Shown here piece after piece: positions 1-18,411 of a stretch of DNA of 64,000 bases. The DNA is from Trichoplax adhaerens (lineage: Eukaryota > Animalia > Placozoa), in the NCBI RefSeq assembly GCF_000150275.1, contig NW_002060947.1:6587648-6651647 (forward strand). The letters run 5' to 3'. Under the pieces are notes generated by a model. That model saw nothing but the letters and a program-made list of their open reading frames with translations. It was not told where the DNA came from and ran no database searches. The translations under genes were made by a program, and so were the position numbers. Every line of letters begins with the position of its first letter. The first letter of the stretch is position 1.

Positions 1-1351
1 CCTTTGCTTCTACCTTAAAACAACTATACAATTGAGAACTGCTTTATTCAACTATCTGACGGGCTTACAGCAGCTAACATTCACGAGTCATCTTATTAAA
101 ATACTTAGGTGAGAACATCTACTAACTAATTTTTTACAGTCAGACTACAATATGTCCATTCACAGAATCATTTCAGTACACATTACAGCACAGCATTAGA
201 TTTACTGTAACACATTTATAATTAGAGTAATTCCTACTGTAAGTAACTAGTTGTAATATATTATCACTATATTATATTAACCAAATTTAGATGACTATTT
301 CTTCACGGTAATTCGTACCGTGACAAATATACATAGAGTAAAGTAAAAAATGGTTCTATCTAAAAATTGTTAGTTTCTCTCTTAGCCCTATTTCTACCCA
401 ACAGCATCCAGCTGTAGGTATGGCTTTATATCTATATACGTGTATTGGAAATCAAGGGCAGTGGCGACTGAGAATATATAAATAAGTTATCGGCATATTT
501 AACGTTCAAGATCAAAAAGTAGAAATAACTCTCAAGGTATCTACCACTAATGATATTAAGACATTTAGAGAAGCCCGGGACGGTCTACCGTGATTTTGCA
601 TTCGTAGAGAGGATGGGTTATCATAAGTAGGATAACAATACGAATATGCGCTTCCAAGCAGATGATGATTTTCTACAGCAGTATAACCGATTAATTAACC
701 AATAGGACATGGAAACTTAGCATTTTTTGTTGGAATAATAGCAAAAATAATAAATTACAGCATCTAAAATGGCTATGCCTATGGATGTGCAAGCATTTGA
801 TCTATCAATGTATAAAAGGAGCAATTCAATTCTTTGTCATATCACATATCCCACTTCTAGTAACCTCGTAGACTTACTATCGCGATGCCAAAATTAATTA
901 TTACTTTTTACTGTAAGACGATTTATTGTCAGATATGGACAATATACGTTCACCGCTATTAACTTTGTAGACTTACTACTACGATGCATGAATTAATAAT
1001 TGCTTTTACTGTAATATAATTTATTCCGACATATAGACGATTTATTGGCATCAAAGTAATCATCTTGAGCTACGGATCACCAATGAATAATTAATTGCTT
1101 TTTCTGTGATATTCTCGATTTAATTATAGTAATCTGCGTACAGTGCATACAGCTAAAAAAGTACTATACTGGTACATCACGTACAAACATCTTGACTGCT
1201 ATTTACTAAAGCAGCCTTAACCAACAATTTTACCTATATTCATTATTCTAATCTCAGATAGGTTCCAGCATACCTTGTTCTCTCCATTATAGAAGCAGCA
1301 ACATGTCCTGATAAAGGAGTTTTGCGTCTTAGCTTGATCGTTGTTAGCCAT
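1..1351 (-). CDS. Probable 5' end of a third Cys-cluster pseudokinase paralog (continues off the left edge)
   Basis: Exon 1351-1274 reads MANNDQAKTQNSFIRTCCCFYNGENK|gtatgc, resembling exon 1 of the gene at 8954 (MDDSDQVQEQGSVFCCCFTLSNK|gt). A candidate exon near 672-588 contains ENHHLL (ExxxLL), but its phase needs an intervening exon I could not find. The kinase domain is not in the window. Confidence 0.5.
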
Positions 1352-4037
1352 ATTTTATGACTTCTCTGTTGATCCGGTAAGCTGACTGCTGATATGAAAT
1401 AGTATTAATTTGATTTACTTTTAATCAATTTTGGCAATCTTGCTATGGCGCTACAAAACTATGAAAAAGGCGGAATTAAAGTAAAGGCTGGAGAATGGGA
1501 TATAGATAAAATAAACTTATTTTACGCCGTAAAAATAATAGTAAAGAATGAATGTGAGAGAAGAAAAAGAAAGAATACGAGTAAATATATTGACAATAAT
1601 ACTAGGATTTCTAGGGAACACTGTCTGTTATAGAATTAGTACTGTATACATTTAGCCTCGATCTAATCAAAATAGGATGTTGAAATGACTAATTTCTGTT
1701 TATATGCTTATGAATACAGTTTAATTATTATACCACTTCGATGCACTCACCGAGCCCGTTTGCGTATAAATTAAATATGGAATGGATAGCTAATCATCGA
1801 AAATTGTTATGAATAAATGTCATTGTAGTATTTTCGATTTATGCATTCATTAAGCCTGTTTACCTATAAATTAAATATGGAATGGGTTGCTAATTAAGTT
1901 TGTTACACATAAATTTAATATAAAGTGGATTGCTAATAATCGATAATTAATTATCAGTAGTTTCCTTATTATATTTTTGATATAGACATCTTCTTATTGA
2001 TGCTAGTGAATAAAAAACGAACTGATACCTCAAGTAACAATTTACAGCGATTTCTACGAGGGCATACACATGTTCGATCTTATATTTTGCCGTATTTTAG
2101 CGATTTAATTTGAATTTGATAGCCCATTCATTTGATTCATTATTTCATATACTTTGTATCCAATCTACTGAATATCTTGTTAAGATAAATATGAAATATT
2201 TGGCCTTCATTGATTTATCGTAACTGGACAATCCATCAACGAATTACATCTTAAGGATGACATCATGGCTGACAAAATGCCTATAAGAAATGGATAGAAA
2301 ACCTGTTTTGTTGATATATTATTTTAAAAGTAAATAAAATTCTTTAGTAGACCACAAGGTTGTCGATTTAGGACGGAAATATGAAGTAGAGGCATACTGC
2401 GAGTTTCATCGCTTACTCAATAGTGCCTTCAGCTATAATTTGCTCATCATTATTGTAAATAGTTTTACAGGTAATCTTGCTGAAAAGAACATATGGATCA
2501 GAATAAAGTTATTAAATTGAAAATTAGATTCTTAGGTAGGTAATCAAGCTAGCAATGACAAGAATGGAGACATAAGTGTATGGTTATGCAAATTTGTCAC
2601 AGGAAAAGTTGATCTGGTGTGGTGATTTTTTTAACATGATTATGATAATTGTGATACTCTATAGATTTAATATAAAAATTAATATTTTAGGATAACTTCT
2701 AATTGAGGGTGAGTTAACTGACCGTGGTCCTTTCGCTGGATCTATCTACACTCATATAGCTACGTTGCATCATCTTTCTGCCTCGATCAAGCTCATACTA
2801 GACATAAAACTGCATTGCAATGATTCATATCCACATTCAATTACACAGAAAGAATAATGAATATCAGTGCTAGACTAGAAATATTCTAGAAATTTCGCTT
2901 GATGTTAAAGAAATATACCATCAGAATGAAGTAAAATGCCCCGATTGAAGACTAAACTTAGGTCCTAACTATCCTTTTTAATAATTCCTTTCGTAATATT
3001 GTCATGCATGATGGAGATCGTAATTAATAGGCTCAAATTGTGCAGCACTGCAATAGCTTCGGTATTACTTCGAAAATTATTAGGACAGAAAAGTTAAATA
3101 TGTAGGCAGCACACTAATGAATACGTGAAATTTTTAGTTATAATAACTTTTATTCCTAGAAATGGTAAATAAAGGATAGATAGATAGAACTGCGAATATA
3201 GATATTACAGTTGAAGATCAAAGTTACACGCCATCCATTTAAAAAATACAAGCGGTACTCAAAACGATCAGCTTCTGATGTAGCAATACCATTTCTTCGC
3301 AAATGGACTATTCTAGAGCTATCAATAAGGAAGAATACGTAGAAATTCTGATTTTTTGAAATTATATGCATAGAGATAGAAAGCTGGCTTTATATTAGGC
3401 TCCAAAAATTTAGCCAGCTTTCTGCTACATGTAGCATTTTTTACAATCTTCTACAAGTATTAACGAAATGGATAATATCAGGATGTTGTTTAAATAGTAT
3501 AATTTTATATCAGCACCTGCATTATGGCAAAGAATGCATACTTGAAACATTACCATTACCTATAATATATGAATACGTATGCAACAAATGCCTGCTAATC
3601 AAAAATCAGACCTTAACAATGCGGGTGCTAAAGATGAAAAAAATTATCCAACGGTATTGTTACTTCATGTATCGCAGATAAATATTCTGTAGCCAGCGCA
3701 GTTTTCCAGGAAATGTGCTGTGTACATTGTATAACTTTATAGAATTTATCGTGCCGAGATCAAAAGACTTCTTTTTACCATGAAGGCACAAATAGCGTAA
3801 TCGAAGGAACAAAGAACGAAATATTTACTGAATCGTGAATTGGATAGCATACTGTTGTTTAGATTTCACTTGAAAGGATGCCAGTAGAGCTATTAGATAA
3901 CATTACTTAAAACAATTGTTTTGGAGTTTACTTTATGTATCTATTCTATAAATTCAATGTTGTCCATTTTCAAGGACATAAGGAAAGGTTTTGTATAAGT
4001 ATATCAGGTCCAATATTTTCATATAACATTTAAATTT

Positions 4038-7000
4038 TTAAAAAGTACAAGACGATGTATCACTCTCTTCATCTTTATTATCTTCGCCGCTTTCTATGTG
4101 TTCATTTGGAATATTATAATCAAAGGTAAAATACGCTGTCTTATAGCGCTCTAGCTTGCCTTTAATCTATTCAAGATGGTTACACAAAGTAGCATGTCAT
4201 AAGATAACAAAGCTCCTACGATACTTACAATCAACATCAGCAGAGCTAATACTTGTATTATCAAAATAGCTATTAAAGACTGCAATGGCAATTACGCGGA
4301 ATTAAATCGGGTATAATAAAACTGTACATTTTAAAATTCTATAGCATGTCAAACCTTATTTAAGGTCGGTCTATCGTTAGTTTTCTCTTTCATGCAATCT
4401 TTAGCAATTTTAAGCAAGGCCTTCCTGAATGTCTTACTGGAAAACTGAGATCGTCTCTTTACCCATACTATTCTTTCATCTTTTAATTTATGCCATTTCG
4501 ACGTATCCTCAAGTAAAAATTTCTATACAATCAATTATAATTAATCAGTGTATCATTCAATGACGTTGCATTAAAGTATAATCTACTGGTCTGTATACGA
4601 ATGTAATCATAATCATTGGTTTGACTAAAGTAAACTAAATTTTACAACTATGCTATTGTCAATACAGTATGCACATGGAAAGAGCAATGGTTCAGCTGTG
4701 AGGTATATTTAAATCGTATAATTTCGCACCATAAAATTAATTTAGTTTATGTCAGTTCATTAGCAAGTGAAATGACAGAAATTTAAAGGCGTAAGGGTAA
4801 GAATAAAGAGTAAGAGGGCAAAGTACGAAGCAATATCATTAACTGATTGACAATTTCAATTCCAGAATGCTTTGAAGAATTATTTACCAATATAATCTAG
4901 ACAACGTTGTCTGAAGCTTAGTATACGATATTCGATCTATCTAGATTACAGAAGTAAATCTGTTCGGTTTGGAGAGCAACTTACAGCAAATACGTATTCA
5001 TCGTTTTCACCATATGGTTCCTTGCCAGTCACAAGTAATAAAATAACCTTCAAGACGAAAATTGACAGCTATCAATATTTCTTACAACACATATTCTCCT
5101 TTGTCACCATATTGACAAGTACCATTTTGCGATACCTTTTCTAGCACACAATCCAAAATAGTAAATTTAAAGAATTCTGTATGACTTACAGCTCCTAAAC
5201 TGAAAATATCATTGGGTATTTCAGGTATTCCTCCTAATGCCCTAGAACTGTAGTAACCAAGTTTATGACGAAAATTTTTAAAACTATCCAAATTGATACT
5301 GGACTTTGCTTTAGGAAAGACTGTGTAATAGCCACCATGAGCTACTTTAGCTGTCCCATCCTTAGTTATAATTATATTATTGCTAGAAAAGAAGGCGAAG
5401 AGAGTTAATCGGTGTGAGGTACAAGTAACTGTTATGCTATTTTTCAATATTTACCCAGTTAAATTGTTATGAACTACTGATTTTGAGTGTAAGTAATATA
5501 ATCCTTCCACAACATCACAAAGTATTTTGTGGCGTTGAAAGCATTCTAATACCCTACTGTTGTCCTATAATGTACAATGTAGAGCATAATTTAAATATAA
5601 GTTCAGATAAAAAAATGAATTCCAATAGAAGTCTAGCGAATAGTCTTTCGCCTCAACTATCATCTAAATATATTAATATTGATTGCTAGATGAAGAAAAG
5701 CTTTCAGTAGATAACATTTATTGCGCGACTGGAACGATATAAAAAAGCTATTATTTACCGTTTCCATCATTCGATCACTTAAACTTTCAACACCCCATTC
5801 CTCTAAAACTCCATTCAGTTCTTTATAAAATCCTAGCACCTTGATTACATTCCTATGTTTTAATCTTCAATCACGAAAAATAGTTATGAACATCTTTAAT
5901 GTTTAAATTTTAATTCGAAATGCCTGATAGCAATAGTAAATCTATCTATAAATGAGGTTACCCTGCTAAAATCCTTGCACCTTCTTCAAGTGGTTGCTTC
6001 GCTTTAAGAACAATCTGAAGAATTAGCACGGTAAAAATTTGTGTTATTACAAACCAAATGAATGTCTCTAAGTCGATGGTCTATTTATTACTCTATTGGA
6101 TAATTCAGGTATGAATACATGGCTATAAGTAATTAGAATTGCATTTCAACAGCTGAGTTACTTCTTTACAACCTGATAATTCCATTGCTTAAATACATAA
6201 CGTCGATTACGATGTTCAATACCAGTACAAGTTTTACCAAAGTAGCCTTCATTTTGTGGTAATTTAAGGGCGTCAAGAATCAACTGGAAAGAGAGTTTAA
6301 CCGATTACCCTTAAATACCATCATGGTGATATTTAAAATGATAAGATGAAGATTATTCTTTCGGTTATTTATGAGTTGAGTAGCTAAGATGATGCTGTAC
6401 GGTAAATATGTTGATACTATATAATCTAATTGCTTCAAGAGAGTTTTTGAAATTAGTGCACAGTGACTCAATATCTTTCTCAATAATTATGTCAAGATAC
6501 ACGTCAAATTGGTCAGAAGTTTTGCAAATCAAATTGAGATCATGCATAATTATAACGAGTAATCAGTTTTGAATGACAAACACTGGCTCTATATAATAGG
6601 AGAATACGATAGGAAATACTCGCAGGCAAATCTCGACCGTTGTATTTCCCATCTTTTCGTTGAAGATGAAATTCTTACTAACCTTAAACAGGCTAACGTT
6701 ATTTATTTCTTCTCTAGTCTCGATCTGACCATCTAGACGATCTGAGATCTGAGATAGAGATGAACTTCTAGAAGAAGCAGTGGTGACTGATTCATCGCTA
6801 GTTCTGCTATGATGAGTTGATAGAGATGGATTTTCCGGAGAGGTATTTTCTAACGTAGCGGGATCATTCTTTTCCTGATTATTTTCATTTTGTCCAAGAA
6901 GATTGGAGGGTACAGGTTGAGCAGTCAATAGTCTGGTTCTTTCACCAATTTGCTCAGGATTCTATAATATAAATGGATTGATCGTCAAGTTAATACTGTA

Positions 7001-8954
7001 GAAGGATAAGGTAGATTAAATAAGACCCTGTCTATGATTCAGTAAAATCGTGCCCAAATTGCTTTTGATCAGATTGCTATTGAACAACACGCAGAATAGG
7101 CTGTACACAAGAACTTTTCCACCTTTATGACTACTGCAACTGTTCTTTCTAGAAATCTAAGATTAAGATAAGGTACGCTGATTAAATGAAATGATCCAAG
7201 ACTAGGATAAGGCAGATTCAGTGAGCTATTGTGTATAATTCAACAATTTCATGGGCTCAAACTGCTTCCAACCAGAATGCAATTTACGAGTGCACAGAAC
7301 AGGCTTAAGGAATCGATGATCAAATCTCTAAACTATTAGTCCATTTCAAGTCATGTTCGCTGATGATACTCACTTTGATCTACGTTAAGCTACATTATAT
7401 CACTAATCTCTTGAAAGTAGTTTACATTAATTATCAATACTGTAGTAATGCCAAGATTTTCAACATCAGGCTCAAGTAAGATAAGGTTAGATTTTGTGCG
7501 GATGACTGAAATCAAAGACTTTGATGGAGGACATTTCCTTGATCCTATCTGAACGAAGAGCTACAAGCATTCTAAATTAGTAGAAAGTCTAAAAGATCGA
7601 CTTATACGTGTTGCTCAAAGTAAATAGTGCTCTCTTTTACTGGTCTCTGAATATATCGTTTAGCTGTAGTATTTTGTAACGAGTTTAAGAAGAAGAATTG
7701 ATTGAATTTTAGAATACGTTGTATGATAATGCAGTATTAATGGCAGAAAGTTTGATGCACAACCTAATAATATCAGAGTTACAGTAGTCCATTCTCAGTA
7801 CAGTATTGATCGAAAAGAATAAAATATGAGCATTGCTATGTTCTACTGAGAATGGCAAAAAATTGTTATGAAATCACTTTCCCAAAGAATATACCAATGA
7901 ATTTAAAGCAACCCATTATTATAAGCATTACCTATTCTACTGTAAGTAAAGTATTGAGTTTGAAGGCTGCGGCGTAGAGGGGAATGATTAATCATTTTCT
8001 GCAGTAGCTTGGAACGATTTATCGACGTGCTGTAGATAGCGCATTACAATTTGCTATCTTGGTAAAATGTAGAATTACGGCTTCTAGCAAGAGAATTCTT
8101 TCTACTGTAGCAGGTCTTATTCAATGAACAACTATTGACAACATTCGAGAATTCTTCCTATTGCAGCAGGCAATCTTAGTACAATTTACAGTAGTACTAC
8201 ATCACAAAATTTTTCCTACTGTTGTAAGTCTTATATTTGATGAACTCTCTGGAAGTGCCCATTTTGACGTGATATCAATTTGCAATCGCTCTCTTTTGAC
8301 AATTAATAAACGGTGGCCTTTAGCAAGATCATTCTTTTTCGACGAAACAACAGTAAGTTCTATCATTTAATCTCACGTTTACAATTAAACAGAATCATTT
8401 GCTAGCCAAGGCATTAACTTGCTCGTATAGCATAAAGTACGATAATACACTTGTCAATTACTTTTCGATAGCAATCTGCCAAAGTACTTAAGGAGCAATT
8501 TGCTGATATCAATAACATCGATTAATTATATACTCTTAAATAATTATTTAATTATTGACTTAAGCCTGTACTGCAAAGAGATTACTCTACTGCGCCATAG
8601 GCAGAGCAATGTGCTTGCCCTATGGAAGGGTAATCACGACATGTCATGATTAAATTTCATTCTTTTATTACGATAGCGCCATCATGGCACAATCTGCTGT
8701 TGGCATCCATAAAGTATCTGGCCTGCAAGGAAATGATATCCTATAGCCATAGCATACTGCACAAAGGTCAGCATACGAGTATTTCAATGGCGTATTCATT
8801 AAATCAATCAATAAAGGCAGAAAAATATCCTACAGTATTCTCTTCTAGCTCAGTAGTCATACTTCAAGGTGCTTATCAAAGTTACCTTATTGGATAGAGT
8901 AAAACAGCAGCAGAAAACGGAGCCTTGCTCTTGAACTTGATCGCTATCATCCAT
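4038..8954 (-). CDS. IRAK/Pelle-like pseudokinase A with N-terminal Cys cluster and dileucine motif, about 10 exons
   Basis: Approximate exons: 8954-8886 (..SVFCCCF..), 6961-6698 (GERTRLL, Ser-rich), 6283-6173 (NEGYFGKT..YVFK), 6014-5962, 5864-5759 (LKHRNVIKVLGFY), 5564-5455 (GLYYLHSKSVVHNNLTG), 5382-5190 (NNIII..AKVAHGGYY..KLGY..NDIFSLGA), 5047-4985 (LVTGKEPY), 4522-4335 (IAKDCMKEKTNDRPTL), 4166-4038 (stop). All introns are GT-AG with consistent phases. Confidence 0.85.
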
Positions 8955-9024
8955 GTGGATTATTTATGAATTGCTGAGTCTCCCCTGGAAAAAATGAGAT
9001 TCATGTTTAGAAAAGGTTCATCAC

Positions 9025-10100
9025 GTTATTAACCTGAGCTAATTATCAGGAGAAGAAAAAACTTGACTATGATCGGACATTTTGTAACAGTAAATAATCT
9101 AATTTTCTTGTACAACATAGCCATCATAGATAGATAACTGCGTTGCTATATAATCTAATTCAAAAATAGAAAACTACAAATTGTTTTCAACGGAACAAGA
9201 AGTTCGATTTTGCAATTTGTAATGGATCAGAGCTCATCGACAGAACAAGAGAAGAAAGAACAAGACTATGATCGGATATTTTTGTAAGAGCAATAATTTA
9301 ATTTTTTCCGATATGACTTGTTACGTTGTACTGTAGTTGCAGCTCATCATCGACATACCATTTTCGACATAATCTAATTCGAAATGAGATGCTGTGCCGA
9401 TCAGGTAACGATGAACTATTTTCATCACAATAAAAATTCTACGACAGAATATACTGCAATTTGTCAATATTATTAACCTGAGCTCATCGATAGAACAAGA
9501 GAAGAAAGAACTCAATTGCGATCGGATATTTCAGAACAGAAACGATTTAATTTTCTCTTCCAACCTGTCTTGTCACATTATAAGTGGTGGCTCATCATCG
9601 AAATACTGTTTGCTATATACGAGTATAATCCGATTCAAATTTAGATGCTCTACCGATCAGACAGCCATGAACTATTTTCATCACAACAAACATTCTACTA
9701 CTGCAATTGGTCATTGTGATTAAGCTGAGCTCATCGACAGAACAAGAGAAGAAAGAACTCAATTACGATCGGATATATTGCAATAGTAATAATTTAATTT
9801 TCTCTTCCAACCTGACCTATTCCATTATACTGTCGTTATAGCTCGTCATGCACGTACTATTTTCTATATAATCTAATTCAAAATTAGGTAACGATGAACT
9901 GTTTTTATCCGAGCAAAAAATCTACTACTATACTGCAATTAGACATTGTTATGAATCTAAGCTCACCGCTAGAACAAGAAAAGAAAGAACTCGACTACGA
10001 TCGGATATTTTGCAATAATAATGAGCTCATTTTCTCTTCCAACGTGACTTTGTTGCAGCCATCATCGACTAACTGCTTTCTATTTACTGCAATCGAACAG
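9025..10100. repeat. Degenerate tandem array, about 5 copies of a 200-245 bp unit
   Basis: Recurring core ctgagctcatcga.agaacaagagaagaaagaactc.a.tacgatcggatatt near 9035, 9230, 9478, 9724 and 9960, directly upstream of pseudokinase A. Confidence 0.85.
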
Positions 10101-10150
10101 ACTGTAGAAAATGATATCACTATAGTCAGTTTCATCAGGCTAAAACCCCA

Positions 10151-10503
10151 TTTTTAATTTTACTACAGTAGTTGTTATTATTTTTCTTTCAATAGTCCGT
10201 AAATAAATAGGTAGAAATCAACAATAATGATAAAACGGAATTTTACGGAGGCAAGAGGAGCCATTTTTGTCTTTGTCAACGCAATTTCTAGCCGATGATT
10301 TGCTACCATGAGCTATTCCTCAACTCTATTTTTAATTTTACTACTGTAGTTGTCATTATTTTTCTTTCAATAGTCCGTATATAAATAGGTAGAAATCAAC
10401 AATAATGACAAAATGGAATTTTACAGAGGCAAGAGGAGCCTTTCTTGTCTTACTTTGTCAACGCAATTTCTAGCCGATGATTTGCTACCATGACCTATTC
10501 CTC
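10151..10503. repeat. Tandem duplication, 2 copies of about 175 bp
   Basis: tttttaattttactac...gatttgctaccatga.ctattcctc occurs at about 10151-10321 and 10330-10503 with few differences. Confidence 0.9.
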
Positions 10504-11419
10504 CATCGTTGCGCATGCTATGCTGTCCACGCTTGACTCTGATTTAAGGATGGGCTCATCCAACGTAGAGGAATAATTTTTTCCTTGATCGATCAATCAA
10601 TCAATTGGCAATCGATCAACAAAATGGATGAGGAAAATGACGTTATGACAGAGTAAGTTCGCTGCAAGATGTGCTTAGCCCCGCGATGGATTAATTAATT
10701 CAATTAATTAGTTCTTGTGATTGATTTGAAAGCTGGAGGGTAAATATTCCCGCAGCGATACTAGATTGCCAAGTGTTCGATACGTGCCTTCGTGTCCAGT
10801 CTAAAATCTATAATCCTATTCGTCCCATCGACATCGTCATGGCACCGTTGTATCCATCCATAATATTACTGAAAAACCACCTAGCAACATCATCATGGAT
10901 ATCATTAACGGCTCATTTAGCTCATGATAACCTACTGAGCTACAGGTAGTGACTGTATATTTGCAACAACAGCCTTGCGATCCTTTGCTAATGGCTGCAT
11001 GAAAATGAACTTAATTCAATTATCCCTTATTACTCTCCTATTCGAATTAAAAGCATTACAAATTAATGGAGTCTATCAACCTTGTCATTCAACTTCTTTT
11101 ATAGATTGCATATGGATAGTGCATGGCATTTTAGTTTCGGTTAAAATTATTATCCGTAAGCATTTATTATCATCAATTAAGATTAAAGCATAAACATTTC
11201 TTTTAATTAGCAATGCCATTAAACTCCTCCTACTTGCTGTAGAATATATAGTGCATTGATAGTGAACAGTATGGCAGTTTATTCTCTAACAAATGATCCT
11301 TAAAAAGGGATGGTTTCTGCTGTACCATGGAACTGAAGAGTACATTAATCAGCTTGTACACAAGAATGGCGTGATCCAATGATTGATTTCAAGACGATTA
11401 CTGTGCATTGAGTAAGCAA

Positions 11420-11655
11420 TCAATCGTGGCCGCATTTTATTTGGGCCGCTTAAATCATCGCCATACTTTACGTTGACTATTTAAATCGTGGTAACATTTT
11501 ACTTGGGAAACTTAAATCATAACCATCATCTGCAGTACTTGGATCATTTCAATCATAGTCATGTTTGATTAGGGCCATTTAAATTGCGGCCACACTCTAC
11601 TGATGTGCCATTTAAATTAAATTATGGCCACATTCTCCTTGGGCCATTTTAATCT
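11420..11655. repeat. Degenerate minisatellite, about 30 bp unit, about 7 copies
   Basis: Repeated ttgggccatttaaatc.tggccacatt-like units. Confidence 0.7.
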
Positions 11656-14600
11656 GTACACGTGCAAACTACGGCCACGATCTGCAAAGGAAATTTATTA
11701 ATTCCAAAAGAGAGTTACAGCGAGTTATCTTGGCTCTACACAGATGATGCACCCTGCAAAATCGAGGCATCGATAATTCTATCATTCGAGCTAGATTCTC
11801 TCCTCTGTTATGATAGAAATAGCAGCGGCAATGCTTTGATCATCAGAATTGAAAAATTAAATTATTTGTGTATTGTTTTACGTTAACATGACGTAATTTG
11901 CTATGCGAACGCTGTCTACCACCTATACATCATGCCATTGGAATAACTAATAAAGCCTAAAGGCAAATGCTCAACTGGAATTTCTTTCTTAAGTTTCTTT
12001 CTGCTAATGACGCAGTACTGGATAACATGTTTAATTTCCCAATCGATCAAGCTTCTCCGTGTTCTATTAATTGTACACAGCTACTGCGAGCGCATTCTAT
12101 CATCGCTTGTCTACATTCGTCCCTAACGTGCACTGCGCCATTTGAAATTGTTCGACATCAACAGCAATTTCATGAATATTGCAATAGTTGAGTTCCGAAG
12201 AGCTTATCAACGTTTACTTGAAAGAAAAGCAATATATATAGAATCGATGTAAAAACTTGAAGAGGAAAATGGTGTTTTTTCGTGTTTGATTACATTATTG
12301 ACTGTTTTCCATCTCCTTGAACATGTTGACATATTAGCGCCTTTTGAAAGACCTAGTGGCAGATCGCCGCGATACTATACAACTTTTGTTGATGATAATA
12401 GTTGTTATGAAATGTAGCAACCAATCGATGTTAATATTTTGTAATTCTTTTCAACGTGGACATTGTTCATCCCTGCATCTACAATATTATTCTTCCATTT
12501 ATTGATTAATCTGCAATCATGATTATAATGGTTAAATTAATTAAATTAAATTAATGATCGCGGATCCACTTTGTCACGTGATAATTTAGTAATAACATGA
12601 TAGTCATATGATAACTTGCAACAAGTTAGCGCCTAATGATTTCATCTTATTTCTTAACGTAGAGAGGAAAGCAGCTTGTTTCAGATAATTGGGAATACAG
12701 TAAAGTGAGCGCTAGCCGATTTCATCAGCTCGATTTCCTATGGTGGGCAAGGGCGAATGGCCAACATTGATATCGAATAATTAAGCTACTTTGATCTATT
12801 GCTGTATGCTATTACGATATCGTTAGCATGCCGTCTAGATTGAGACCAATCTGGCCGAATCGATCTATCCTTCGACGCGTAGATAGGCCGACTGGAAGAG
12901 TTTATTAAGTTGTAGCTGCCGATATTAGTTTAGTTTTAATGACATGTATATATACGCTGCAGCTAGGACACGCCACAATATTGATGCACAGGAGATGACT
13001 ACATAATTATTATACGTGTACGGACAAGAACCGAATTGTTATTGCTAGATTGCATTACTCAGCAACTATGGTATAATATATTCATGCATACAGTATCAAA
13101 GGGATTAATGGGTAGTATTGTCTTTCGGCATAACATGTTTTGATGGAATCAATTAATTGTGCATACAGTAGCAAGTGAATATTATTAAGCAGAATATACT
13201 CAATACTTAATTATAATTAAAAAGCGAAGTAGAGTGAACTAGCAGTCGAAAATGTAGTCTTGGTGCCTTCTGTTGACACAGTTCAACTGCAGTAGATATA
13301 GAACTTGCTAAAATTACTGTAGAATTCCAATAAAAATGTCTTAAAATCCAAGCTGCAAACTTGCGCGCTTAGCTTAAATCGTTTCTAGAATAAATATGCA
13401 GTAAAACTGTTACTATTCTTTCCATATGCTACAACTGCATTGCCTAATGAGCTAACACAGTATCGTATCTACAATTCTATCCATTCCATTTTCTTTGATA
13501 TTATTATTAGCAATATAAACTAGCCTCTTGTGTATTCACCTATGACGTGTAATATCTACCTAGACAGCCAGAGTACGTTAATGGATATCGATAGAATATT
13601 CAGAAATCTCGAATTATTGCTATCAATTGAGTAATAAATTCCAATTTACATCTAACGAATATGGATAACTTTAGGAAGAGGAACAAATTATCAACTGACA
13701 ACCGTAACGACTACAAAGCTACCGTTGTAGTAATGTTTCAAATATTAAAGGTGTGCAAGTGTAAATATGTTTGGATGATGGCTACAATAACATTCTGCTA
13801 CAGTATTCGTACACATAAAACAATTTTGAATTATTACATCAGATATACATATAGATTTTAATTAATTGCAATACGCATACTGTCGATTCAAAATAGTAAT
13901 CAAAAGCGGTACGCAAAAATTAGCCTTCCTATACAATTTTCTACAGCACTAGGACAATTTCCTAGAATTGGTTCGGATTCGGCCACTTGAAGAATGATGT
14001 ACTTGAAGAATTTTAAGAGAATATAAAAGGTACCGCTTAAATATGATCCTAGCATTTGCCAACAATTTAGCACTTTAACTAAATTTGCCTCACTATAACC
14101 GAAGCGATAGTATTATATATATATTAAGGCATCGATTAAAGCAGGAAGACAGCTCAAAGTACAGGAATAATTGTAAAACTTCATATAATTGCCAGGTTAT
14201 CTATGCAACTTTGTTCAAATATCTTTTAGTAGTAGCATTTTTTACTGTTTTCGTAGTATTTTAGTTTCACAAATTTCTGGGAGATTAGAGCATTGTAAAG
14301 TACTTTCCAATAATGACATCCAAGACTAAATACTGTACTATAAGTTTACCTCAACAATTTGAATAAGTTTCATGATAATATACGCCCATTACAATATCAT
14401 GAAAGCAAATGAAGCCCAATGCTAAATTTCGTAAGTCTACTCCAGTAATTTGAGTAAATGCTATATATGTAGTACTTGTACAGTACTTTCTAATCTAATT
14501 TTATCGCATATCGAATCTCACAAATCTACTCTAATAAGTTATCCTATTTTTGACTGTTTAAAACAAAGATTAATGCTAAAATTTTGGTCGATATTTATCT

Positions 14601-15625
14601 CTAAGTTACAATCATTCATCAAGAATGTCTTTCTTAAATGGCCGGGAAACTATCTTGGCGATAGATATCATGCTACATCTATTGCAGCAAGTATTTACAG
14701 AAGTATACACCACTAAAATATATTGAAATACATTGTAAATAGCCATAAGATTATTTTACATATTTCATACTTTATTACTTTCGGAATTTAAAATCTCAGC
14801 AATAATATATCAATTTAAGTCTACATTATTATACAGTATCATAGTAGAAATGATGACAATAAATACCATCATTTATACAAGTAAACTGGATATTATTGAC
14901 AGAGACCATAATATATAAATTGCAGAAAGTTTTTGAAGAAGTATATAGCAGAATAATACGAGAGAACTGTATCGCAAACATCAGTAAAATTATTCATAGA
15001 GCTATTACTCTATTGCATATTTTTTATCTGGATATAAGTTCCAGCGAGGTGAATTTGAATTACAACCTACGAATAAGTTAGAATGGTAATTAACAACAGT
15101 TTACAGGTCTGGGGCAGCATCTCCAACTATCATGAATGAATTTATGTAGTTGCTATTTATTCTGATATCCACGTTAGTATCTTATGTTTGAAATTTTAAA
15201 CTATCGGTAAATTGCCGATATGCTTAACGTTTATATCATAAAAATGTTACAGTTTACTAAATGATACTAGTAATAGATGATAGGAAAGAAACCGTTACTA
15301 TGATATAGCTTTGATCTAGAACTGGCATATCTTTCGCTAAGCCAATCACTTTATTGGTAATATAGGTGGTAGTAAATGGGAAAGTGGAATAGGATAATTA
15401 AAGCTTGAGAAATGCCGAATTAGGTATATACTCCGCAATTTTTTATTTACTGACATTAGTATCCTTATAGTTTGTGCTTTCATTTAGCCACTACTCTGGT
15501 TATGCCTAGATGGAATTGAATTTGCAATCAACTTCGTAATCATTCTTGAATTCTTTCAAATCTCTGCAATATTCCATTGTTTGACATAAGTTAGATTAAA
15601 ATTAAATAAACTTACAATCTTCAAT

Positions 15626-18411
15626 TTACTTTAGCATGTCATAGCCGTCATTCTATTATTAACATAGTCAAATTTTAAAAATAAAAGTACTGGATAGTGA
15701 AAAGCATCATAGTTAATTTTTTAATCCTTAAAAGGTTCGCCAACGTATATTTTAGTTTGCAAAGTAGTGGTTTATACAGAAAGGCTTAAATAAGATCAAA
15801 CTGTTTGCTTCTGGGATATAATTTAACTTAATTAGAAGAAAAATAATAAAAAATTTACTATAATTTAATTTAGGTTACCGAGTTTAAGGCTAATTCTTTT
15901 TGAAATAAATTTTCTTCAATCTATTAAATTGCATTTTTATCTATAATCAACAATTAATGATCAAGAAATGGAAAACATAGTTAGTCAATATAATTTATAG
16001 AGCCATCTATAAATTTAGAGAATTATTGCTCTAAAATATTCTTAATTGGTATATACGTGTATACCCAGTCTAAACTTGGTCTCTCTAGATCGTCATCATG
16101 TAAACAATAATTGGCCAAAGAAAGTAAATCTCTTCGAAAAGTTCTTTTAGTTACTGTAAATTTTCTTTTTGCCCATTTAATTTTACTATCTTTCAATCTC
16201 CAATTATTCCATTGCTGATGATCCGATAATAAATCACGCTAGAGCAGAGCATAAAATTACAAGTGATCACTTTGACATCAACTATATTTTAATGCATATA
16301 TCACAAATAGCACAAGGACATTTATTATAAGCCGATTACACATAGACTGTTTTAAACCACAATAAATTATATGAATTGTAAGTATACTTCTTCACGATTC
16401 ATGCAAAATTTTAAAATAGAAATCAATTAAGCAAGCGAATATTTAAATTTGCATCTGCAAGGATACAAACGACGACTTACTGTATATTGTGGATCATCAT
16501 CAGGCAAATATGGTTCATCGCCACTAATCATGACAATTAAAATCTTACGTGGAAGATTATAAAATAGGCCATTAGAGTTTAAGGAAGAGTTATGAATAAG
16601 TAATATCAATTTTGTAACTTTCTTAGCGCGAAAATATGAAAACGCTTTAAAGGAAAATTTCGATTAAACACTTTAGTACTATTAAATCTTTAACCTGACT
16701 ATTCACATATGATTTTATAAGTATCTAGAAATAACTTACTGCACCAAAGCTATAAACATCATTTGATGAAATCACTTTGCCATCGAAAGCTTGAGTGGAA
16801 ATGTATCCAAGTTTCCCTTGCTTTGCTAGTGTATCTTCATCACAATCTTTCATACCCTTATTAACATAGGGTAATAAACTATAGTAGCCACCATGGCTTA
16901 GCTTTGTGGTAATGTAAGAGGAACCATTAAGAAGAACATTCCGACTAGTATTGATTAATAAGAAGTACTAATCAAATTAAGATTAACGAGCAGATAAGAG
17001 TTCAAAGTTTACAAGATTCCTTGGATGAATATATAACTTATCGAGAACAATGCCATAGTTAAATCTTTCAAATAATTACTAGCCATAAACTAATGTTATG
17101 TTTCTCATTTGTCTTTACCTTGTTAAATTGTTATGAACAATTTTATTACTATGCAGATAGTGAAGGCCATCTAAAATTTCATTTAAAATGGAGAATCTTT
17201 GAAGGCATGTTAGAATTTGATCATCTCTCTATTTAAGTAGAAAATATCAATTTTAACCTTATTATCCCAAAAATACTCCAGCAAAACATAAAGAAAGCGG
17301 GAAATATCGTTCTTGTATTTGTATTAAAGGAAAGTTTAATATATTTCCATTACTAGTTTAGTCGTACCGATTTTATGCGTTTATATAAACTACTTGAGCA
17401 ATATTCTTCTAGTACGCCATGGAATTCAAAATCACGGTAATATGCAAATATTTCAACCAGATGATCAAAGTGGAAGCTATGAGAATACAAGAAATTGGAA
17501 TAGTAAGCAAAGACTAATAGATGACATGTGGAATATGCAAGAAATCACACGATCATATCAATTTTAGCTATATAAGTCACCTTTTCAGCTTATCGACACT
17601 TTGTTTTATTTCATCTTTATTAGATTCATGATCAAATGGTATAACCTTGAAAATAATTTAAATGATCTCATTAAACGTGAATATGAAGCAGGAATATAAA
17701 AGTTAAAAGTGAATGACGGTAGTAATAATTACGATAATAATAGAAGTATAATAAAAGATTGGTGGCTTACATTTAAATCCCAGGACTTAAATATATAGTG
17801 ATCTTCATCGTAAGGCAAATCATGGATTGTTCCAAAATAGCCAGCGCCTAGAGATTTCTTTAATGTGTCTGATACAACCTAATGCAATAATTTCATAGTT
17901 AGAAATAGGATTTATTTTGATTTATAGTATATGGGCTCAGAAAGGAGCAGACGTAAATCATTAATTATGAAATGCCTTGCTGCTACAGTTGATAACAAAA
18001 TAGCAATATTAAAAGATACATTCTTTATGCCATTATGATCGATGGCAGTGTTTCAACAGAATAATAGCCAGTGAAACAAGTCAGAATAACTTACATCTTT
18101 AGGTGGTAATTCTTCATCTTTAACATCATATCTTGTTAAACCACGACGGCGACCGAAAAAGTCTTCACCACCGCTTAATAACCTAATGGTTTCATCTTTA
18201 TCTTCATTCTGATTAAATCATATAAAAATACTTTACTATTGTGACATTAAGTTAAGCCAATTTTCATCATTAAATTGATTGAATTGATGTTCATAAAATA
18301 AATAGTCAGTTTCAGTCTTACACAAGTCCAACAGCAGTAAGTGCATCCTGATTCTGATTTAGGTTCATCAAGGCCGTCAAAGACGCTTTTATTGATTGGA
18401 TTCAGAGACAT
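15626..18411 (-). CDS. IRAK/Pelle-like pseudokinase B, paralog of A, about 11 exons
   Basis: Spliced translation: MSLNPINKSVFDGLDEPKSESGCTYCCWTC|NEDKDETIRLL..|..LGAGYFGTIH..YIFKSW..|..|FHFDHLVEIFAYY..|..GLHYLHSNKIVHNNLTS|RNVLL..TKLSHGGYY..KLGYISTQAF..NDVYSFGA|ILIVMISGDEPY..|..LANYCLHDDDLERPSL..|..|NDGYDMLK*. Intron positions match gene A across the kinase domain. Confidence 0.87.

What the first reader, a model, noticed from the sequence alone, without database searches (positions are those of the whole stretch)
1..18411. Tandem family of putatively lipid-anchored, death-domain-less IRAK/Pelle pseudokinases (an animal analogue of plant RLCK/ZRK pseudokinases?)
Seen: two complete genes (4038-8954, 15626-18411) and a probable third 5' end (1274-1351), all on the minus strand; the two complete genes share intron positions. 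Both complete proteins keep the kinase fold motifs (GYFG, the beta3 Lys in Y[VI]FK, L.YLH, D[IV][FY]S.G, C..RP). Both replace catalytic HRD with HNN and DFG with HGG, and both lack APE and apparently the alphaC Glu. These replacements are conserved between otherwise very diverged paralogs, which argues for selection on a non-catalytic function. Instead of the death domain of animal IRAK/Pelle, each begins with a short exon carrying a Cys cluster (FCCCF, CTYCCWTC, TCCCF). Established: Cys clusters near N-termini are typical S-acylation sites, and plant receptor-like cytoplasmic kinases, the sister group of Pelle, use acylated N-termini and include clustered immune pseudokinases (ZED1/ZRK). Inference: a lineage-expanded family of membrane-anchored scaffold or decoy pseudokinases, possibly acting in innate immunity or symbiont sensing.
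Basis: partly seen in the sequence, partly recalled or inferred. Interest (0 to 1): 0.85.

Follow-up and report, generated by a model that had tools for sequence, protein, structure and literature searches.

The report
Lipid-anchor-type dead IRAK-like kinases of Trichoplax
Three neighbouring genes of the simple animal Trichoplax encode expressed, conserved, catalytically dead relatives of the immune kinase IRAK4 that start with a cysteine cluster (a likely fatty-acid membrane anchor) instead of the usual death domain; the genes are public but this character has not been described in print.

Summary
The window is Trichoplax adhaerens. It carries two complete minus-strand genes, A (TRIADDRAFT_56778) and B (56779), and the first exon of a third, C (56777).

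- **Gene A structure:** RNA contigs from three studies confirm every splice junction.
- **Shared structure:** A and B have all nine coding introns at the same positions and phases.
- **Family:** the genes belong to a 12-gene clade found only in placozoan-like sequences.
  - 11 of 12 members lack the catalytic Asp (HRD to HNN, HEN or HNC).
  - Six, including A, B and C, also have His for the DFG Asp (HGG or HGC). A 2021 paper reports this Asn/His pair for human IRAK2.
- **Closest known kinase:** sequence profiles and a predicted structure both put IRAK4 first.
- **No death domain:** none is present in the RNA, in the public models or in the surrounding DNA.
- **Cysteine cluster:** eight of the 12 first exons carry a CC(C)(C) cluster.
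- **Selection:** natural variants in gene A are 8 synonymous to 4 non-synonymous, with none non-synonymous in the kinase domain.

Membrane anchoring and an immune scaffold role are inferred, not shown. A 2019 paper reported death-domain-less IRAK-like clusters in placozoans, but not these genes, their dead active sites or the Cys cluster. This scan found the same family earlier on other DNA of this genome.

The parts
10454..10544 (-). Gene A, 5'UTR exon (about 91 nt) with GTAAGA donor after 10454. It holds a 27-codon upstream ORF in frame with the main ATG, ended by the TAA at 8966-8964.
   Evidence: Loose end of RNA contigs X10 and X15 maps here. Donor read. ORF check.
8886..8984 (-). Gene A, exon with the start codon (ATG at 8954). 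It encodes residues 1-23, with the Cys cluster CCC at 8912-8904.
   Evidence: Joints 6961|8886 and the acceptor at 8984 are seen in X15, X5 and X10. Coordinates verified.
6683..6961 (-). Gene A, exon 2 of the CDS. It encodes a Ser/Thr/Asn/Glu-rich linker of 93 residues that is predicted disordered and includes ERTRLL.
   Evidence: RNA joints. pLDDT is below 50 for residues 1-108.
6173..6283 (-). Gene A, exon with the Gly-rich loop (EGYFGKT) and the beta3 Lys (K148, 6190-6188).
5962..6014 (-). Gene A, 53-nt exon for helix alphaC (IVLKAKQPLEEGARILA).
   Evidence: Joints 5864|5962 and 6014|6173 in X5 and X10. Present in P0003.
5759..5864 (-). Gene A, exon for beta4-beta5 (LKHRNVIKVLGFY...).
5455..5564 (-). 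Gene A, exon for helix alphaE and the catalytic loop. HNN replaces HRD at 5471-5463.
5190..5382 (-). Gene A, exon from the catalytic-loop Asn to subdomain IX. HGG replaces DFG at 5339-5331, and YYSSRAL replaces the APE region.
4985..5047 (-). Gene A, 63-nt exon (VILLLVTGKEPY...).
4355..4522 (-). Gene A, exon for helices alphaG to alphaI (LKDERIVW...CMKEKTNDRP).
3997..4166 (-). Gene A, last exon. The CDS ends with the stop at 4040-4038, and the 3'UTR reaches at least 3997.
15890..18411 (-). Gene B (TRIADDRAFT_56779), ten coding exons: 18411-18322, 18208-18095, 17878-17771, 17645-17581, 17476-17368, 17228-17119, 16944-16740, 16543-16481, 16238-16065, 15940-15890. Cys cluster CTYCCWTC at 18345-18322, HNN at 17135-17127, HGG at 16895-16887.
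   Evidence: The public models P0011 and P0152 map onto the window. A GT-AG chain reproduces them. Motifs verified. No RNA was laid on this gene.
1274..1351 (-). Gene C (TRIADDRAFT_56777), first coding exon (26 residues, Cys cluster TCCCF). The rest of the gene lies before the window's start.
   Evidence: 100% match to P0153 residues 1-26. The remaining exons are in L001.

Best explanation
A, B and C are three members of a 12-gene, placozoan-restricted clade of IRAK/Pelle-type kinase-fold proteins that can no longer transfer phosphate.

**Architecture**
- Each protein has a short acidic N-terminus ending in a cluster of two to four cysteines.
- A disordered linker follows.
- Then comes a kinase domain most like that of IRAK4.
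- There is no death domain, signal peptide or N-terminal hydrophobic segment.

**Most likely mechanism**
- The Cys cluster is S-acylated and holds the protein on the cytoplasmic face of a membrane. Lipid tethering thereby takes the place of death-domain recruitment.
- The dead kinase domain acts as a scaffold or allosteric partner, or possibly a decoy, for the catalytically intact, death-domain-less IRAK-like kinases encoded elsewhere in the genome.
- A, B, C, E, F and G carry Asn for the catalytic Asp and His for the DFG Asp. They keep the beta3 Lys and the catalytic-loop Asn.
- A 2021 paper reports the same Asn/His pair for human IRAK2, which binds ATP. Nucleotide binding without catalysis is therefore plausible.

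**Shown versus inferred**
- Shown: gene structure, expression and splicing of A, family membership, loss of catalytic residues, purifying selection, absence of a death domain.
- Inferred: acylation, membrane location, binding partners, pathway.
For: **Splicing and identity**
- Full splicing of A appears in RNA contigs from three studies.
- The spliced product is identical to XP_002113040.1.
- The Pkinase domain scores E = 1.7e-22 in A and 8e-20 in B.

**IRAK4 is the best match**
- A profile of six family members against all PDB sequences gives IRAK4 117 bits. The next hits are a plant lectin receptor kinase (98.6), a LysM-domain receptor-like kinase (90.7), SOBIR1 (85.8) and IRAK3 (84.8).
- The exon-6 profile alone gives IRAK4 46.7 bits against 31.2 for the next hit.
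- The exon-8 profile also puts IRAK4 first, though not significantly.
- Foldseek on the AlphaFold model returns IRAK4 for all 36 rows listed down to rank 48, with E about 1e-13.

**Catalytic motifs in all 12 genes**

| Motif | Variant | Members |
|---|---|---|
| HRD | HNN | 9 |
| HRD | HEN | D |
| HRD | HNC | J |
| HRD | HND | L |
| DFG | HGG | A, B, C, E, F |
| DFG | HGC | G |
| DFG | DGC | H to L |
| DFG | DFG | D |

**One clade.** The 12 genes group together with 100/98 support, apart from the intact Trichoplax IRAK-like kinases and outside references.

**No death domain**
- An in-frame TAA lies upstream of the ATG in the mRNA.
- Pfam finds no Death hit in the proteins.
- None of the 125 Death-domain exon matches in the genome lies in or near the window.

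**N-terminus**
- A Cys cluster sits in the first exon of A, B, C, D, E, F, H and I.
- There is no N-terminal hydrophobic segment.

**Selection**
- Among 12 natural variants in A's CDS, 8 are synonymous and 4 are not. None of the 4 lies in the kinase domain.
- pN/pS is about 0.13. Binomial P = 8e-4 against neutrality.
- A's protein is identical in T. adhaerens and T. sp. H2, and B differs by 1 residue.
- Exon-6 fragments from unnamed public contigs are 68-82% identical to single paralogs. They keep each paralog's own HGG, HGC or DGC, while the flanking intron translation is unrelated.

**IRAK2 parallel.** In human IRAK2 the catalytic Asp is Asn and DFG is 'HP'. The His is proposed to stand in for a Mg ion, and ATP binding has been reported (PMC7955167).
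Against: - No experiment or computation here shows acylation, membrane location or any binding partner.
- The Cys cluster could serve another purpose, such as metal or redox chemistry.
- I could not find the first exons of G, J, K and L, so the cluster is shown for only 8 of 12 members.
- Member L keeps the catalytic Asp (HND) and the DFG Asp (DGC). It may be a weak kinase, so the family is not uniformly dead.
- A, B and C have no intact IRAK-like kinase directly beside them. The nearest is about 20 kb before the window's start, next to D. A pairing by adjacency is therefore not even suggested for these three.
- The Tyr gatekeeper typical of IRAKs is probably Leu or Val here.
- The structure model is only moderately confident: mean pLDDT 59, with the kinase domain mostly 60-90.
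- No tree with named IRAK, RLK, RIPK and MLKL references could be built.
Confidence: 0.55

Rival explanations
1. They are atypical but active kinases. Other residues would do the work of the missing aspartates, as in WNK or CASK, so 'pseudokinase' is a misnomer.
For: - The beta3 Lys is invariant and the catalytic-loop Asn is kept.
- Gene A has a Glu at or beside the alphaC position.
- Member L has HND and DGC.
- PMC7955167 points to CASK, where a His binds ATP directly.
Against: - In A, B, C, E, F and G both aspartates are gone. The alphaC Glu is absent in most members and the APE Glu is lost in A and B.
- Human IRAK2, which has the same Asn/His pair, is treated as catalytically inactive (PMC7955167).
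Confidence: 0.1
2. They are decaying duplicates under relaxed selection. On this view they are gene copies on the way to becoming pseudogenes, and the shared motif changes are merely inherited from one damaged ancestor.
For: - The family arose by duplication and the motif changes are clade-wide.
- Gene C differs at 7 of 400 residues between T. adhaerens and T. sp. H2. That is more than A (0) or B (1).
Against: - All reading frames are open, with canonical splice sites.
- A is transcribed and fully spliced in three studies.
- Variants in A are mostly synonymous, with none non-synonymous in the kinase domain.
- Paralog-specific orthologous exons are conserved in other contigs while the intron flanks are not.
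- Synonymous sites between A and C are saturated, yet the proteins remain 49% identical over the whole length (59% over the kinase domain).
Confidence: 0.05
3. The proteins are dead IRAK-like kinases, but the Cys cluster is not a lipid anchor. It could instead be a metal-binding, redox-sensing or protein-contact motif, and the proteins are soluble.
For: - No test of acylation was possible.
- The cluster varies in form: CC, CCC, CCCC, C..CC..C.
- Most members lack an N-terminal Gly for myristoylation, so a first membrane contact is not obvious.
Against: - The cluster always lies within about 30 residues of the start and is flanked by hydrophobic or aromatic residues.
- It is the only conserved feature of an otherwise divergent first exon.
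- Upstream of related Trichoplax IRAK-like genes there are candidate first exons with classic MG..C acylation motifs: MGNACKK, MGGICSC, MGCLYSKKC. These hits could be chance matches.
Confidence: 0.25

Closest known systems
Human IRAK2 (pseudokinase of the Myddosome)
   Same: - The kinase fold is of IRAK type.
- The catalytic Asp is replaced by Asn, and the DFG Asp position is occupied by His (PMC7955167). This is the same pair as HNN/HGG in A, B, C, E and F.
- The beta3 Lys is kept.
- IRAK2 is thought to act as a non-catalytic scaffold.
   Different: - IRAK2 has an N-terminal death domain, a conserved Lys-Glu salt bridge and C-terminal TRAF6-binding motifs.
- The placozoan proteins have a Cys cluster instead of the death domain, and most lack the alphaC Glu.
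- They form their own clade, so the shared Asn/His pair is probably convergent. I could not compare with an IRAK2 sequence directly.
Human IRAK4 (active kinase; closest solved structure)
   Same: - It is the best sequence-profile match, at 117 bits, and the best fold match.
- The motif EAL.G.(I/V)...(S/N)DI(Y/F)SFG and the C-terminal C......RP helix are shared.
   Different: IRAK4 is catalytically intact (HRD, DFG, APE). It has a death domain and a Tyr gatekeeper.
Plant receptor-like cytoplasmic kinases, including the pseudokinases ZED1/RKS1 (ZRK group) and acylated BIK1/PBS1
   Same: - They consist of an RLK/Pelle-type kinase domain alone, of about 350-430 residues.
- They have no extracellular or death domain.
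- They carry N-terminal acylation-type motifs.
- They form clustered gene families that include dead members.
- Automatic names of the Trichoplax sp. H2 orthologues are plant RLKs: PXC2, LYK5.
- The nearest ESM-Atlas clusters are streptophyte kinases of similar size (a lead only).
   Different: - This is a different kingdom and an independent expansion.
- The plant motifs are usually MG..C (myristoyl plus palmitoyl), whereas A, B and C have no Gly2.
- No NLR partner is known or was sought here.
- What I say about the plant proteins rests on general knowledge, not on a test here.
Death-domain-less IRAK-like kinase cluster of placozoans (Kamm et al. 2019, PMC6321704)
   Same: - It concerns the same genus and the same kinase group.
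- The paper states that all IRAK-related kinases lack a death domain. It adds that many lie in a tight cluster as placozoan-specific paralogs.
   Different: - The accessions listed there do not include XP_002113039 to XP_002113041.
- The cluster it names (TrispH2_009235-009242) is most probably the array on the other scaffold (my inference from the neighbouring XP numbers).
- The main text mentions neither pseudokinases, catalytic residues nor palmitoylation.

Membership tests
Eukaryotic protein kinase superfamily (Pfam PF00069 / PF07714) | Significant match to the kinase-domain profile over its full length | tested here: met
   - A scores 80.5 bits, covering profile positions 9-258 of 263.
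- B scores 71.7 bits.
- C, D, H and L score 69-84 bits.
- All are above the 31.7-bit cut-off.
Pseudokinase (sequence definition) | Loss of at least one of the beta3 Lys, the HRD Asp and the DFG Asp | tested here: met
   - A, B and C have HNN and HGG, so both Asp residues are lost and the Lys is kept.
- Across the family, 11 of 12 members lack the HRD Asp and 6 of 12 lack the DFG Asp.
Pseudokinase (biochemical definition) | No phosphotransfer activity | not testable with these tools
   This needs purified protein and a kinase assay.
IRAK/Pelle family (TKL group) | Kinase domain closer to IRAK than to other kinase families | tested here: met
   - IRAK4 tops the PDB sequence search by 18 bits over the next hit, a plant RLK of the same RLK/Pelle group.
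- IRAK3 also ranks high.
- No RIPK, MLKL, RAF or ILK appears in the best 60.
- Foldseek returns IRAK4 for every row listed down to rank 48.
- Non-placozoan hits in the 1.84-billion library include Capsaspora 'TKL/IRAK' and Artemia 'IRAK4-like'.
IRAK/Pelle family (TKL group) | N-terminal death domain | tested here: not met
   - Pfam finds no Death hit.
- In the mRNA, the ORF is closed by a TAA four codons before the ATG.
- The nearest Death-domain exon match on this scaffold is more than 2 Mb away.
IRAK/Pelle family (TKL group) | Tyrosine gatekeeper | tested here: inconclusive
   - By ungapped spacing to the (G/E)SL motif, the gatekeeper is Leu in A, B, D, H and L, and Val in C.
- HMMER's gapped alignment instead puts an aromatic residue (W, Y or F) opposite IRAK4 Tyr262.
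IRAK/Pelle family (TKL group) | Placement inside the family on a tree with named IRAK, RLK, RIPK, MLKL and RAF references | not tested
   - No tool gave me named reference sequences in usable form.
- The 102-column tree shows only that the 12 genes are one clade, apart from the intact kinases.
Plant-type RLCK / ZRK pseudokinases (architecture) | RLK/Pelle kinase domain alone, without transmembrane or extracellular part | tested here: met
   - Proteins of 337-426 residues consist of a disordered N-terminus and one kinase domain.
- No N-terminal hydrophobic segment is present.
Plant-type RLCK / ZRK pseudokinases (architecture) | Works with an NLR or receptor partner as decoy or adaptor | not tested
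   No partner was sought, and no complex prediction was run.
S-acylated (palmitoylated) peripheral membrane proteins | Cysteine(s) shown to carry fatty acid, with membrane association depending on them | not testable with these tools
   - Only the motif is shown: CC to CCCC within residues 13-30 in 8 of the 12 first exons.
- The Cys frequency elsewhere in these proteins is 1.3-3.4%.

The most novel reading that the evidence does not exclude
Placozoans may run IRAK-type signalling the way plants run receptor-like cytoplasmic kinases. Fatty-acid anchors would replace the death-domain Myddosome. A dedicated, anciently conserved clade of membrane-tethered proteins would serve as the scaffolds or decoys of the pathway. 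These proteins would bind ATP but be catalytically dead, and they reached the same Asn/His active site as vertebrate IRAK2 independently.
Probability: 0.25. Interest if true: 0.75.

Novelty: new variant of a known kind. Interest (0 to 1): 0.5.

Why it matters
IRAK kinases are the hub of Toll/IL-1 signalling, and in bilaterians they are recruited through death domains. How early animals that lack both canonical Toll-like receptors and death-domain IRAKs use these kinases is an open question (Kamm et al. 2019).

This work makes two points:
- Half of the placozoan IRAK-like repertoire is a conserved, expressed, catalytically dead clade with a probable lipid anchor.
- Six of its members carry the same Asn/His active-site pair reported for human IRAK2.

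These give concrete, testable candidates for non-catalytic scaffolds in an early-branching animal. They also offer a natural comparison for how IRAK2-type pseudokinases bind nucleotide. In addition, the family is a third example, after vertebrate IRAK2/3 and plant ZRKs, of dead kinases arising inside the IRAK/Pelle-RLK group.

Tried and rejected
- **Single exons against Pfam.** These gave only weak Pkinase hits on the catalytic-loop exon. The public full-length proteins were needed.
- **The search for homologous proteins.** Run with P0003 and with the family alignment, it returned only family members, one grass kinase and mostly unnamed metagenome kinases (some labelled serine/threonine kinases), because of its word index. 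It was of no use for classification.
- **The look-up of encoding contigs.** I could not fetch Trichoplax sp. H2 or other placozoan DNA, so no orthologue dN/dS was possible.
- **Paralog dN/dS (A against C, A against B).** Synonymous sites are saturated (pS 0.6-0.8) and my codon mapping covered only part of the genes. I did not use this result.
- **Death-domain exon near the genes.** None was found. One weak match 3 kb from paralog G lies on the opposite strand and belongs to another gene.
- **Literature.** Searching by the gene and protein accessions found nothing. Searching 'pseudokinase' with 'Trichoplax' found nothing relevant.
- **TRAF6-type motif.** PNEHIE in A's tail fits P-x-E-x-x-acidic. 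It is absent from B and C and is expected by chance about once in five proteins by my rough estimate, so I do not use it.
- **Complex prediction.** No job was sent. I hold no full-length sequence of an intact Trichoplax IRAK-like kinase, and I do not claim binding.


Full report
**What the window is**

The window is 32% G+C eukaryotic DNA. The protein it encodes at 8954-4038 is letter for letter XP_002113040.1, TRIADDRAFT_56778 of Trichoplax adhaerens. That gene sits on a scaffold of 8,573,113 bases, the same length as the window's contig. The genome is therefore the placozoan T. adhaerens.

**Checking the observation: gene A**

I laid the contigs of four public runs from four studies on window 3900-9100.
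- Two contigs of 1443 and 1255 nt (X10, X5) join every exon.
- All nine joints inside the stretch have GT..AG ends.
- A run on record as RNA (X15) shows the long first joint, 6961|8886.

These contigs correct the model in two ways.

It encodes helix alphaC. It also explains the frame problem I met when I tried to join those two exons directly.

Second, the exon holding the ATG begins at 8984 behind a TTCCAG acceptor, and the contigs continue into a further 5' exon.
- The loose end of the contigs maps to 10454-10544, where it is followed by a GTAAGA donor.
- The leader holds an upstream ATG in frame with the main one, but a TAA four codons before the main ATG closes it.
- The protein therefore starts at 8954, and nothing lies upstream of the Cys cluster.

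**Checking the observation: genes B and C**

I mapped the two public models of gene B onto the window and found a GT-AG chain of ten exons that reproduces them.
- The T. adhaerens model reads through the last donor.
- The Trichoplax sp. H2 model has a last exon at 15940-15890. Its product (IK, eight residues, IYF) matches the tails of C and A in spacing.
- I take 15890 as the coding end, not 15626.

Exon lengths and phases:

| Gene | Exon lengths (nt) | Intron phases |
|---|---|---|
| A | 69, 279, 111, 53, 106, 110, 193, 63, 168, 129 | 0,0,0,2,0,2,0,0,0 |
| B | 90, 114, 108, 65, 109, 110, 205, 63, 174, 51 | 0,0,0,2,0,2,0,0,0 |

The introns fall at the same alignment positions in both genes. 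Window 1351-1274 is the first exon of TRIADDRAFT_56777, gene C, at 100% identity. The rest of C lies before the window's start.

**A note on method**

I searched exon by exon, by reference. A profile of exon 6 searched against 1.84 billion representative proteins returned the public full-length proteins, and I then used those by their ids. Inside scripts I joined exons only for two purposes. One was to check identity with those public proteins. The other was to place exon 5 beside exon 6 for a tree.

**The family**

Searching the whole genome with exon 6 of A, and then with a profile of ten copies, gives a clear split.
- Twelve places score E = 7e-18 or better.
- Seven places score much lower, with E of 2.5e-8 or weaker.

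The twelve genes are:

| Genes | Place |
|---|---|
| D, C, A, B | here, scaffold positions 6.566-6.605 Mb |
| E, F | 0.42 Mb away |
| G | at 2.55 Mb |
| K, H, L, I, J | an array on another scaffold |

On a 102-column tree they form one clade with 100/98 support. They are separated by a long branch from the intact Trichoplax kinases, two plant RLKs, an Artemia IRAK4-like protein and vertebrate IRAK4 exons. A and C are sisters, with 98/93 support.

Five of the seven low-scoring places are intact IRAK-like kinases with HRD, DFG and PPE in one exon. Four lie in the other array and one is next to D. The other two are not of this kind: one on another scaffold is a different TKL-type kinase (HLD), and one on a small scaffold has HRN in place of HRD.

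Between D and C there is one more gene, on the plus strand. It has a first exon MGNACKK, and its kinase domain has HLL for HRD and DYG for DFG.

**Are they dead?**

The catalytic-loop and Mg-binding motifs read as follows.
- HRD: HNN in nine genes, HEN in D, HNC in J, HND in L.
- DFG: HGG in A, B, C, E and F; HGC in G; DGC in H to L; DFG in D.
- The APE Glu is lost in A and B, and kept in H, I, J and L.
- The beta3 Lys, one Gly of the Gly-rich loop and the catalytic-loop Asn are invariant in the six full-length proteins.
- At the alphaC Glu position only A has Glu. The others have Gln, Thr, Asn or Lys.

By the sequence definition A, B and C are pseudokinases that lack both aspartates. L may not be one.

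**What kind of kinase domain?**

- Pfam sees a complete kinase domain and nothing else.
- A profile of six members searched against all PDB sequences puts IRAK4 first at 117 bits. Next come a plant lectin receptor kinase (98.6), GCN2 (91.1, two domains summed), a LysM receptor-like kinase (90.7), SOBIR1 (85.8) and IRAK3 (84.8). No RIPK, MLKL, RAF or ILK appears in the best 60.
- Exon 6 alone gives the same order with a 15-bit gap. The alignment shows the IRAK4-like stretch EAL.G.(I/V)...(S/N)DI(Y/F)SFG.
- Exon 8 alone also lists IRAK4 first, at E = 0.4, which is not significant by itself. Exon 5 is generic.
- The AlphaFold model has a disordered N-terminus (residues 1-108) and a kinase fold of moderate confidence. 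Foldseek returns IRAK4 for all 36 rows listed down to rank 48.
- The nearest non-placozoan proteins in the large library are plant RLKs, a Capsaspora 'TKL/IRAK' kinase and an Artemia 'IRAK4-like' protein.

I therefore file the domain under IRAK/Pelle-RLK. Two reservations apply. There is no death domain. And I could not build a tree with named references.

**No death domain**

Besides the mRNA evidence and Pfam, a genome-wide search for Death-domain exons found 125 matches. None lies in the window or within 2 Mb of it on this scaffold, and none lies in the other family clusters. The single exception is a weak, opposite-strand match 3 kb from G that belongs to another gene.

**The N-terminus**

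First exons with a Cys cluster are shown for eight of the 12 genes: A, B, C, D, E, F, H and I.

| Gene | Cys-cluster context |
|---|---|
| A | VFCCCF |
| B | CTYCCWTC |
| C | TCCCF |
| D | FTCCG |
| E | FCCCCY |
| F | ICCCCF |
| H | TCCCF |
| I | TCCC(SC) |

- Each of these exons ends soon after the cluster.
- I did not find the first exons of G, J, K and L.
- There is no hydrophobic segment before the kinase domain.
- H begins with MGESQS, which could also be myristoylated.

That such clusters are typical S-acylation sites is established general knowledge. That these particular ones are acylated is inference.

**Selection**

The contigs of the four runs differ from the window at 12 sites in A's coding sequence.
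- Eight are synonymous.
- Four are not: one lies in the disordered linker and three fall in two adjacent codons of the C-terminal tail.
- None of the four lies in the kinase domain.
- With 266 synonymous and 1012 non-synonymous sites, pN/pS is about 0.13. So few replacements are unlikely under neutrality (binomial P = 8e-4).

The proteins of T. adhaerens and Trichoplax sp. H2 are identical for A, differ by one residue for B and by seven for C.

Seven short unnamed proteins from Logan and ENA contigs match exon 6. Six are 68-82% identical to one paralog each: A, B, E, F, G or J. The seventh (P0043) is only 54% identical to J; I take it for K's counterpart, but K was not in that comparison. Each keeps the HGG, HGC or DGC of its nearest paralog, while the translated intron flanks are unrelated. 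Their source organisms are not named. I take them for other placozoans, which is inference. If so, the paralogs and their dead active sites predate the split of those lineages.

**How it most likely works**

This is a membrane-tethered, non-catalytic IRAK-type module. The closest mechanistic precedent is human IRAK2.
- According to Lange et al. 2021 (PMC7955167), IRAK2 has Asn for the catalytic Asp and 'HP' for DFG.
- The same paper reports that IRAK2 has been shown to bind ATP, and proposes that the His replaces a Mg ion, as in CASK.
- The HNN/HGG genes have the same two replacements and keep the Lys and the Asn.
- Nucleotide binding without transfer is therefore a reasonable, testable guess.

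Because the clade is separate, the likeness to IRAK2 is probably convergent.

Who the partners are is unknown. The intact IRAK-like kinases of the same genome are the obvious candidates, but A, B and C have none directly beside them. I ran no binding test.

**What is already known**

Kamm et al. 2019 (PMC6321704) state that Trichoplax has several IRAK-related kinases, that all lack a death domain, and that many lie in a tight cluster as placozoan-specific paralogs.
- Their list of accessions does not include the three genes of this window.
- Their main text does not mention pseudokinases, catalytic residues or palmitoylation.
- The gene models are public as 'hypothetical protein' in T. adhaerens. 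In sp. H2 they carry automatic plant-RLK names.
- No paper in the library cites these accessions.

This scan has found the same family before on other DNA of this genome. Earlier follow-ups describe the E/F pair and the array on the other scaffold, and they also count 12 genes. I reached that count independently. Those notes are not independent evidence.

**Verdict**

It is unproven for anchoring and function. I class it as a new variant of a known kind, of moderate interest.

Noticed in passing
window 9018-10061 and 10144-10503: The intron between gene A's leader exon and its ATG exon holds about five tandem copies of a unit of roughly 240 bp. A duplication of about 180 bp copies the 3' end of the leader exon. 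Only the copy at 10454 is followed by a GT donor, and it is the one used in RNA.
   Followed up: partly
L003:6731 (+) and L001:300-3500 (+), i.e. about 9.9 to 5 kb before the window's start: A further kinase-like gene lies on the plus strand between D and C, convergent with C. Its first exon is MGNACKKPSTPIFK (a myristoyl plus palmitoyl type motif). It has a GEGEFGQV Gly-rich loop, HLL in place of HRD, DYG in place of DFG and PPD in place of APE. It is a different kind of dead IRAK-like kinase, built like the intact subfamily with HRD and DFG in one exon.
   Followed up: partly
L007:483 (+) and L011:6925 (-): Short ORFs MGGICSCRKNE and MGCLYSKKCNRK lie about 1.4-1.5 kb upstream of two intact IRAK-like kinase exons, on the same strand. 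They look like dual-acylation first exons. By my estimate such a pattern turns up by chance about once per 6 kb, and I checked no RNA.
   Followed up: no
L007, L008, L010, L012 (other scaffold 2.755-2.780 Mb; this scaffold 6.5617-6.567 Mb): Four times an intact IRAK-like kinase on the plus strand is followed within 2-5 kb by a family pseudokinase on the minus strand (H, L, I and D). In these convergent pairs the pseudokinases are the less degenerate members (DGC or DFG kept). A, B, C, E, F and G have no such neighbour.
   Followed up: partly
P0121, P0136, P0138 (vertebrate IRAK4 exon ORFs) compared with window 5382-5190: The vertebrate IRAK4 exon running from N-ILLDE to DIYSFGV(V) appears to begin and end within a few nucleotides of the boundaries of the family's exon 6. 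The intact Trichoplax IRAK-like kinases have no intron between HRD and DFG. This may be a shared old intron position. I inferred it only from read-through ORFs.
   Followed up: no
window 4103-4086 (gene A residues 404-409): PNEHIE in A's acidic C-terminal tail fits the TRAF6-binding consensus P-x-E-x-x-acidic. The three non-synonymous tail variants fall on its two free positions. The motif is absent from B and C and is expected by chance in about one protein in five by my rough estimate.
   Followed up: partly
window 6871-6854 (A, ERTRLL) and 18193-18176 (B, ETIRLL): An acidic dileucine-type motif ([DE]xxxLL) follows the Cys cluster in A, B and D (EEVMLL), but not in C, H or I. Another first-stage note on this stretch raised it. 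It is present in 3 of the 6 members I could check.
   Followed up: partly
L009:4523-4957 (-), paralog K: In paralog K the intron between exons 6 and 7 is open in frame, so exons 6 and 7 stand in one 145-codon open frame. This could be an intron read through or one being lost.
   Followed up: no
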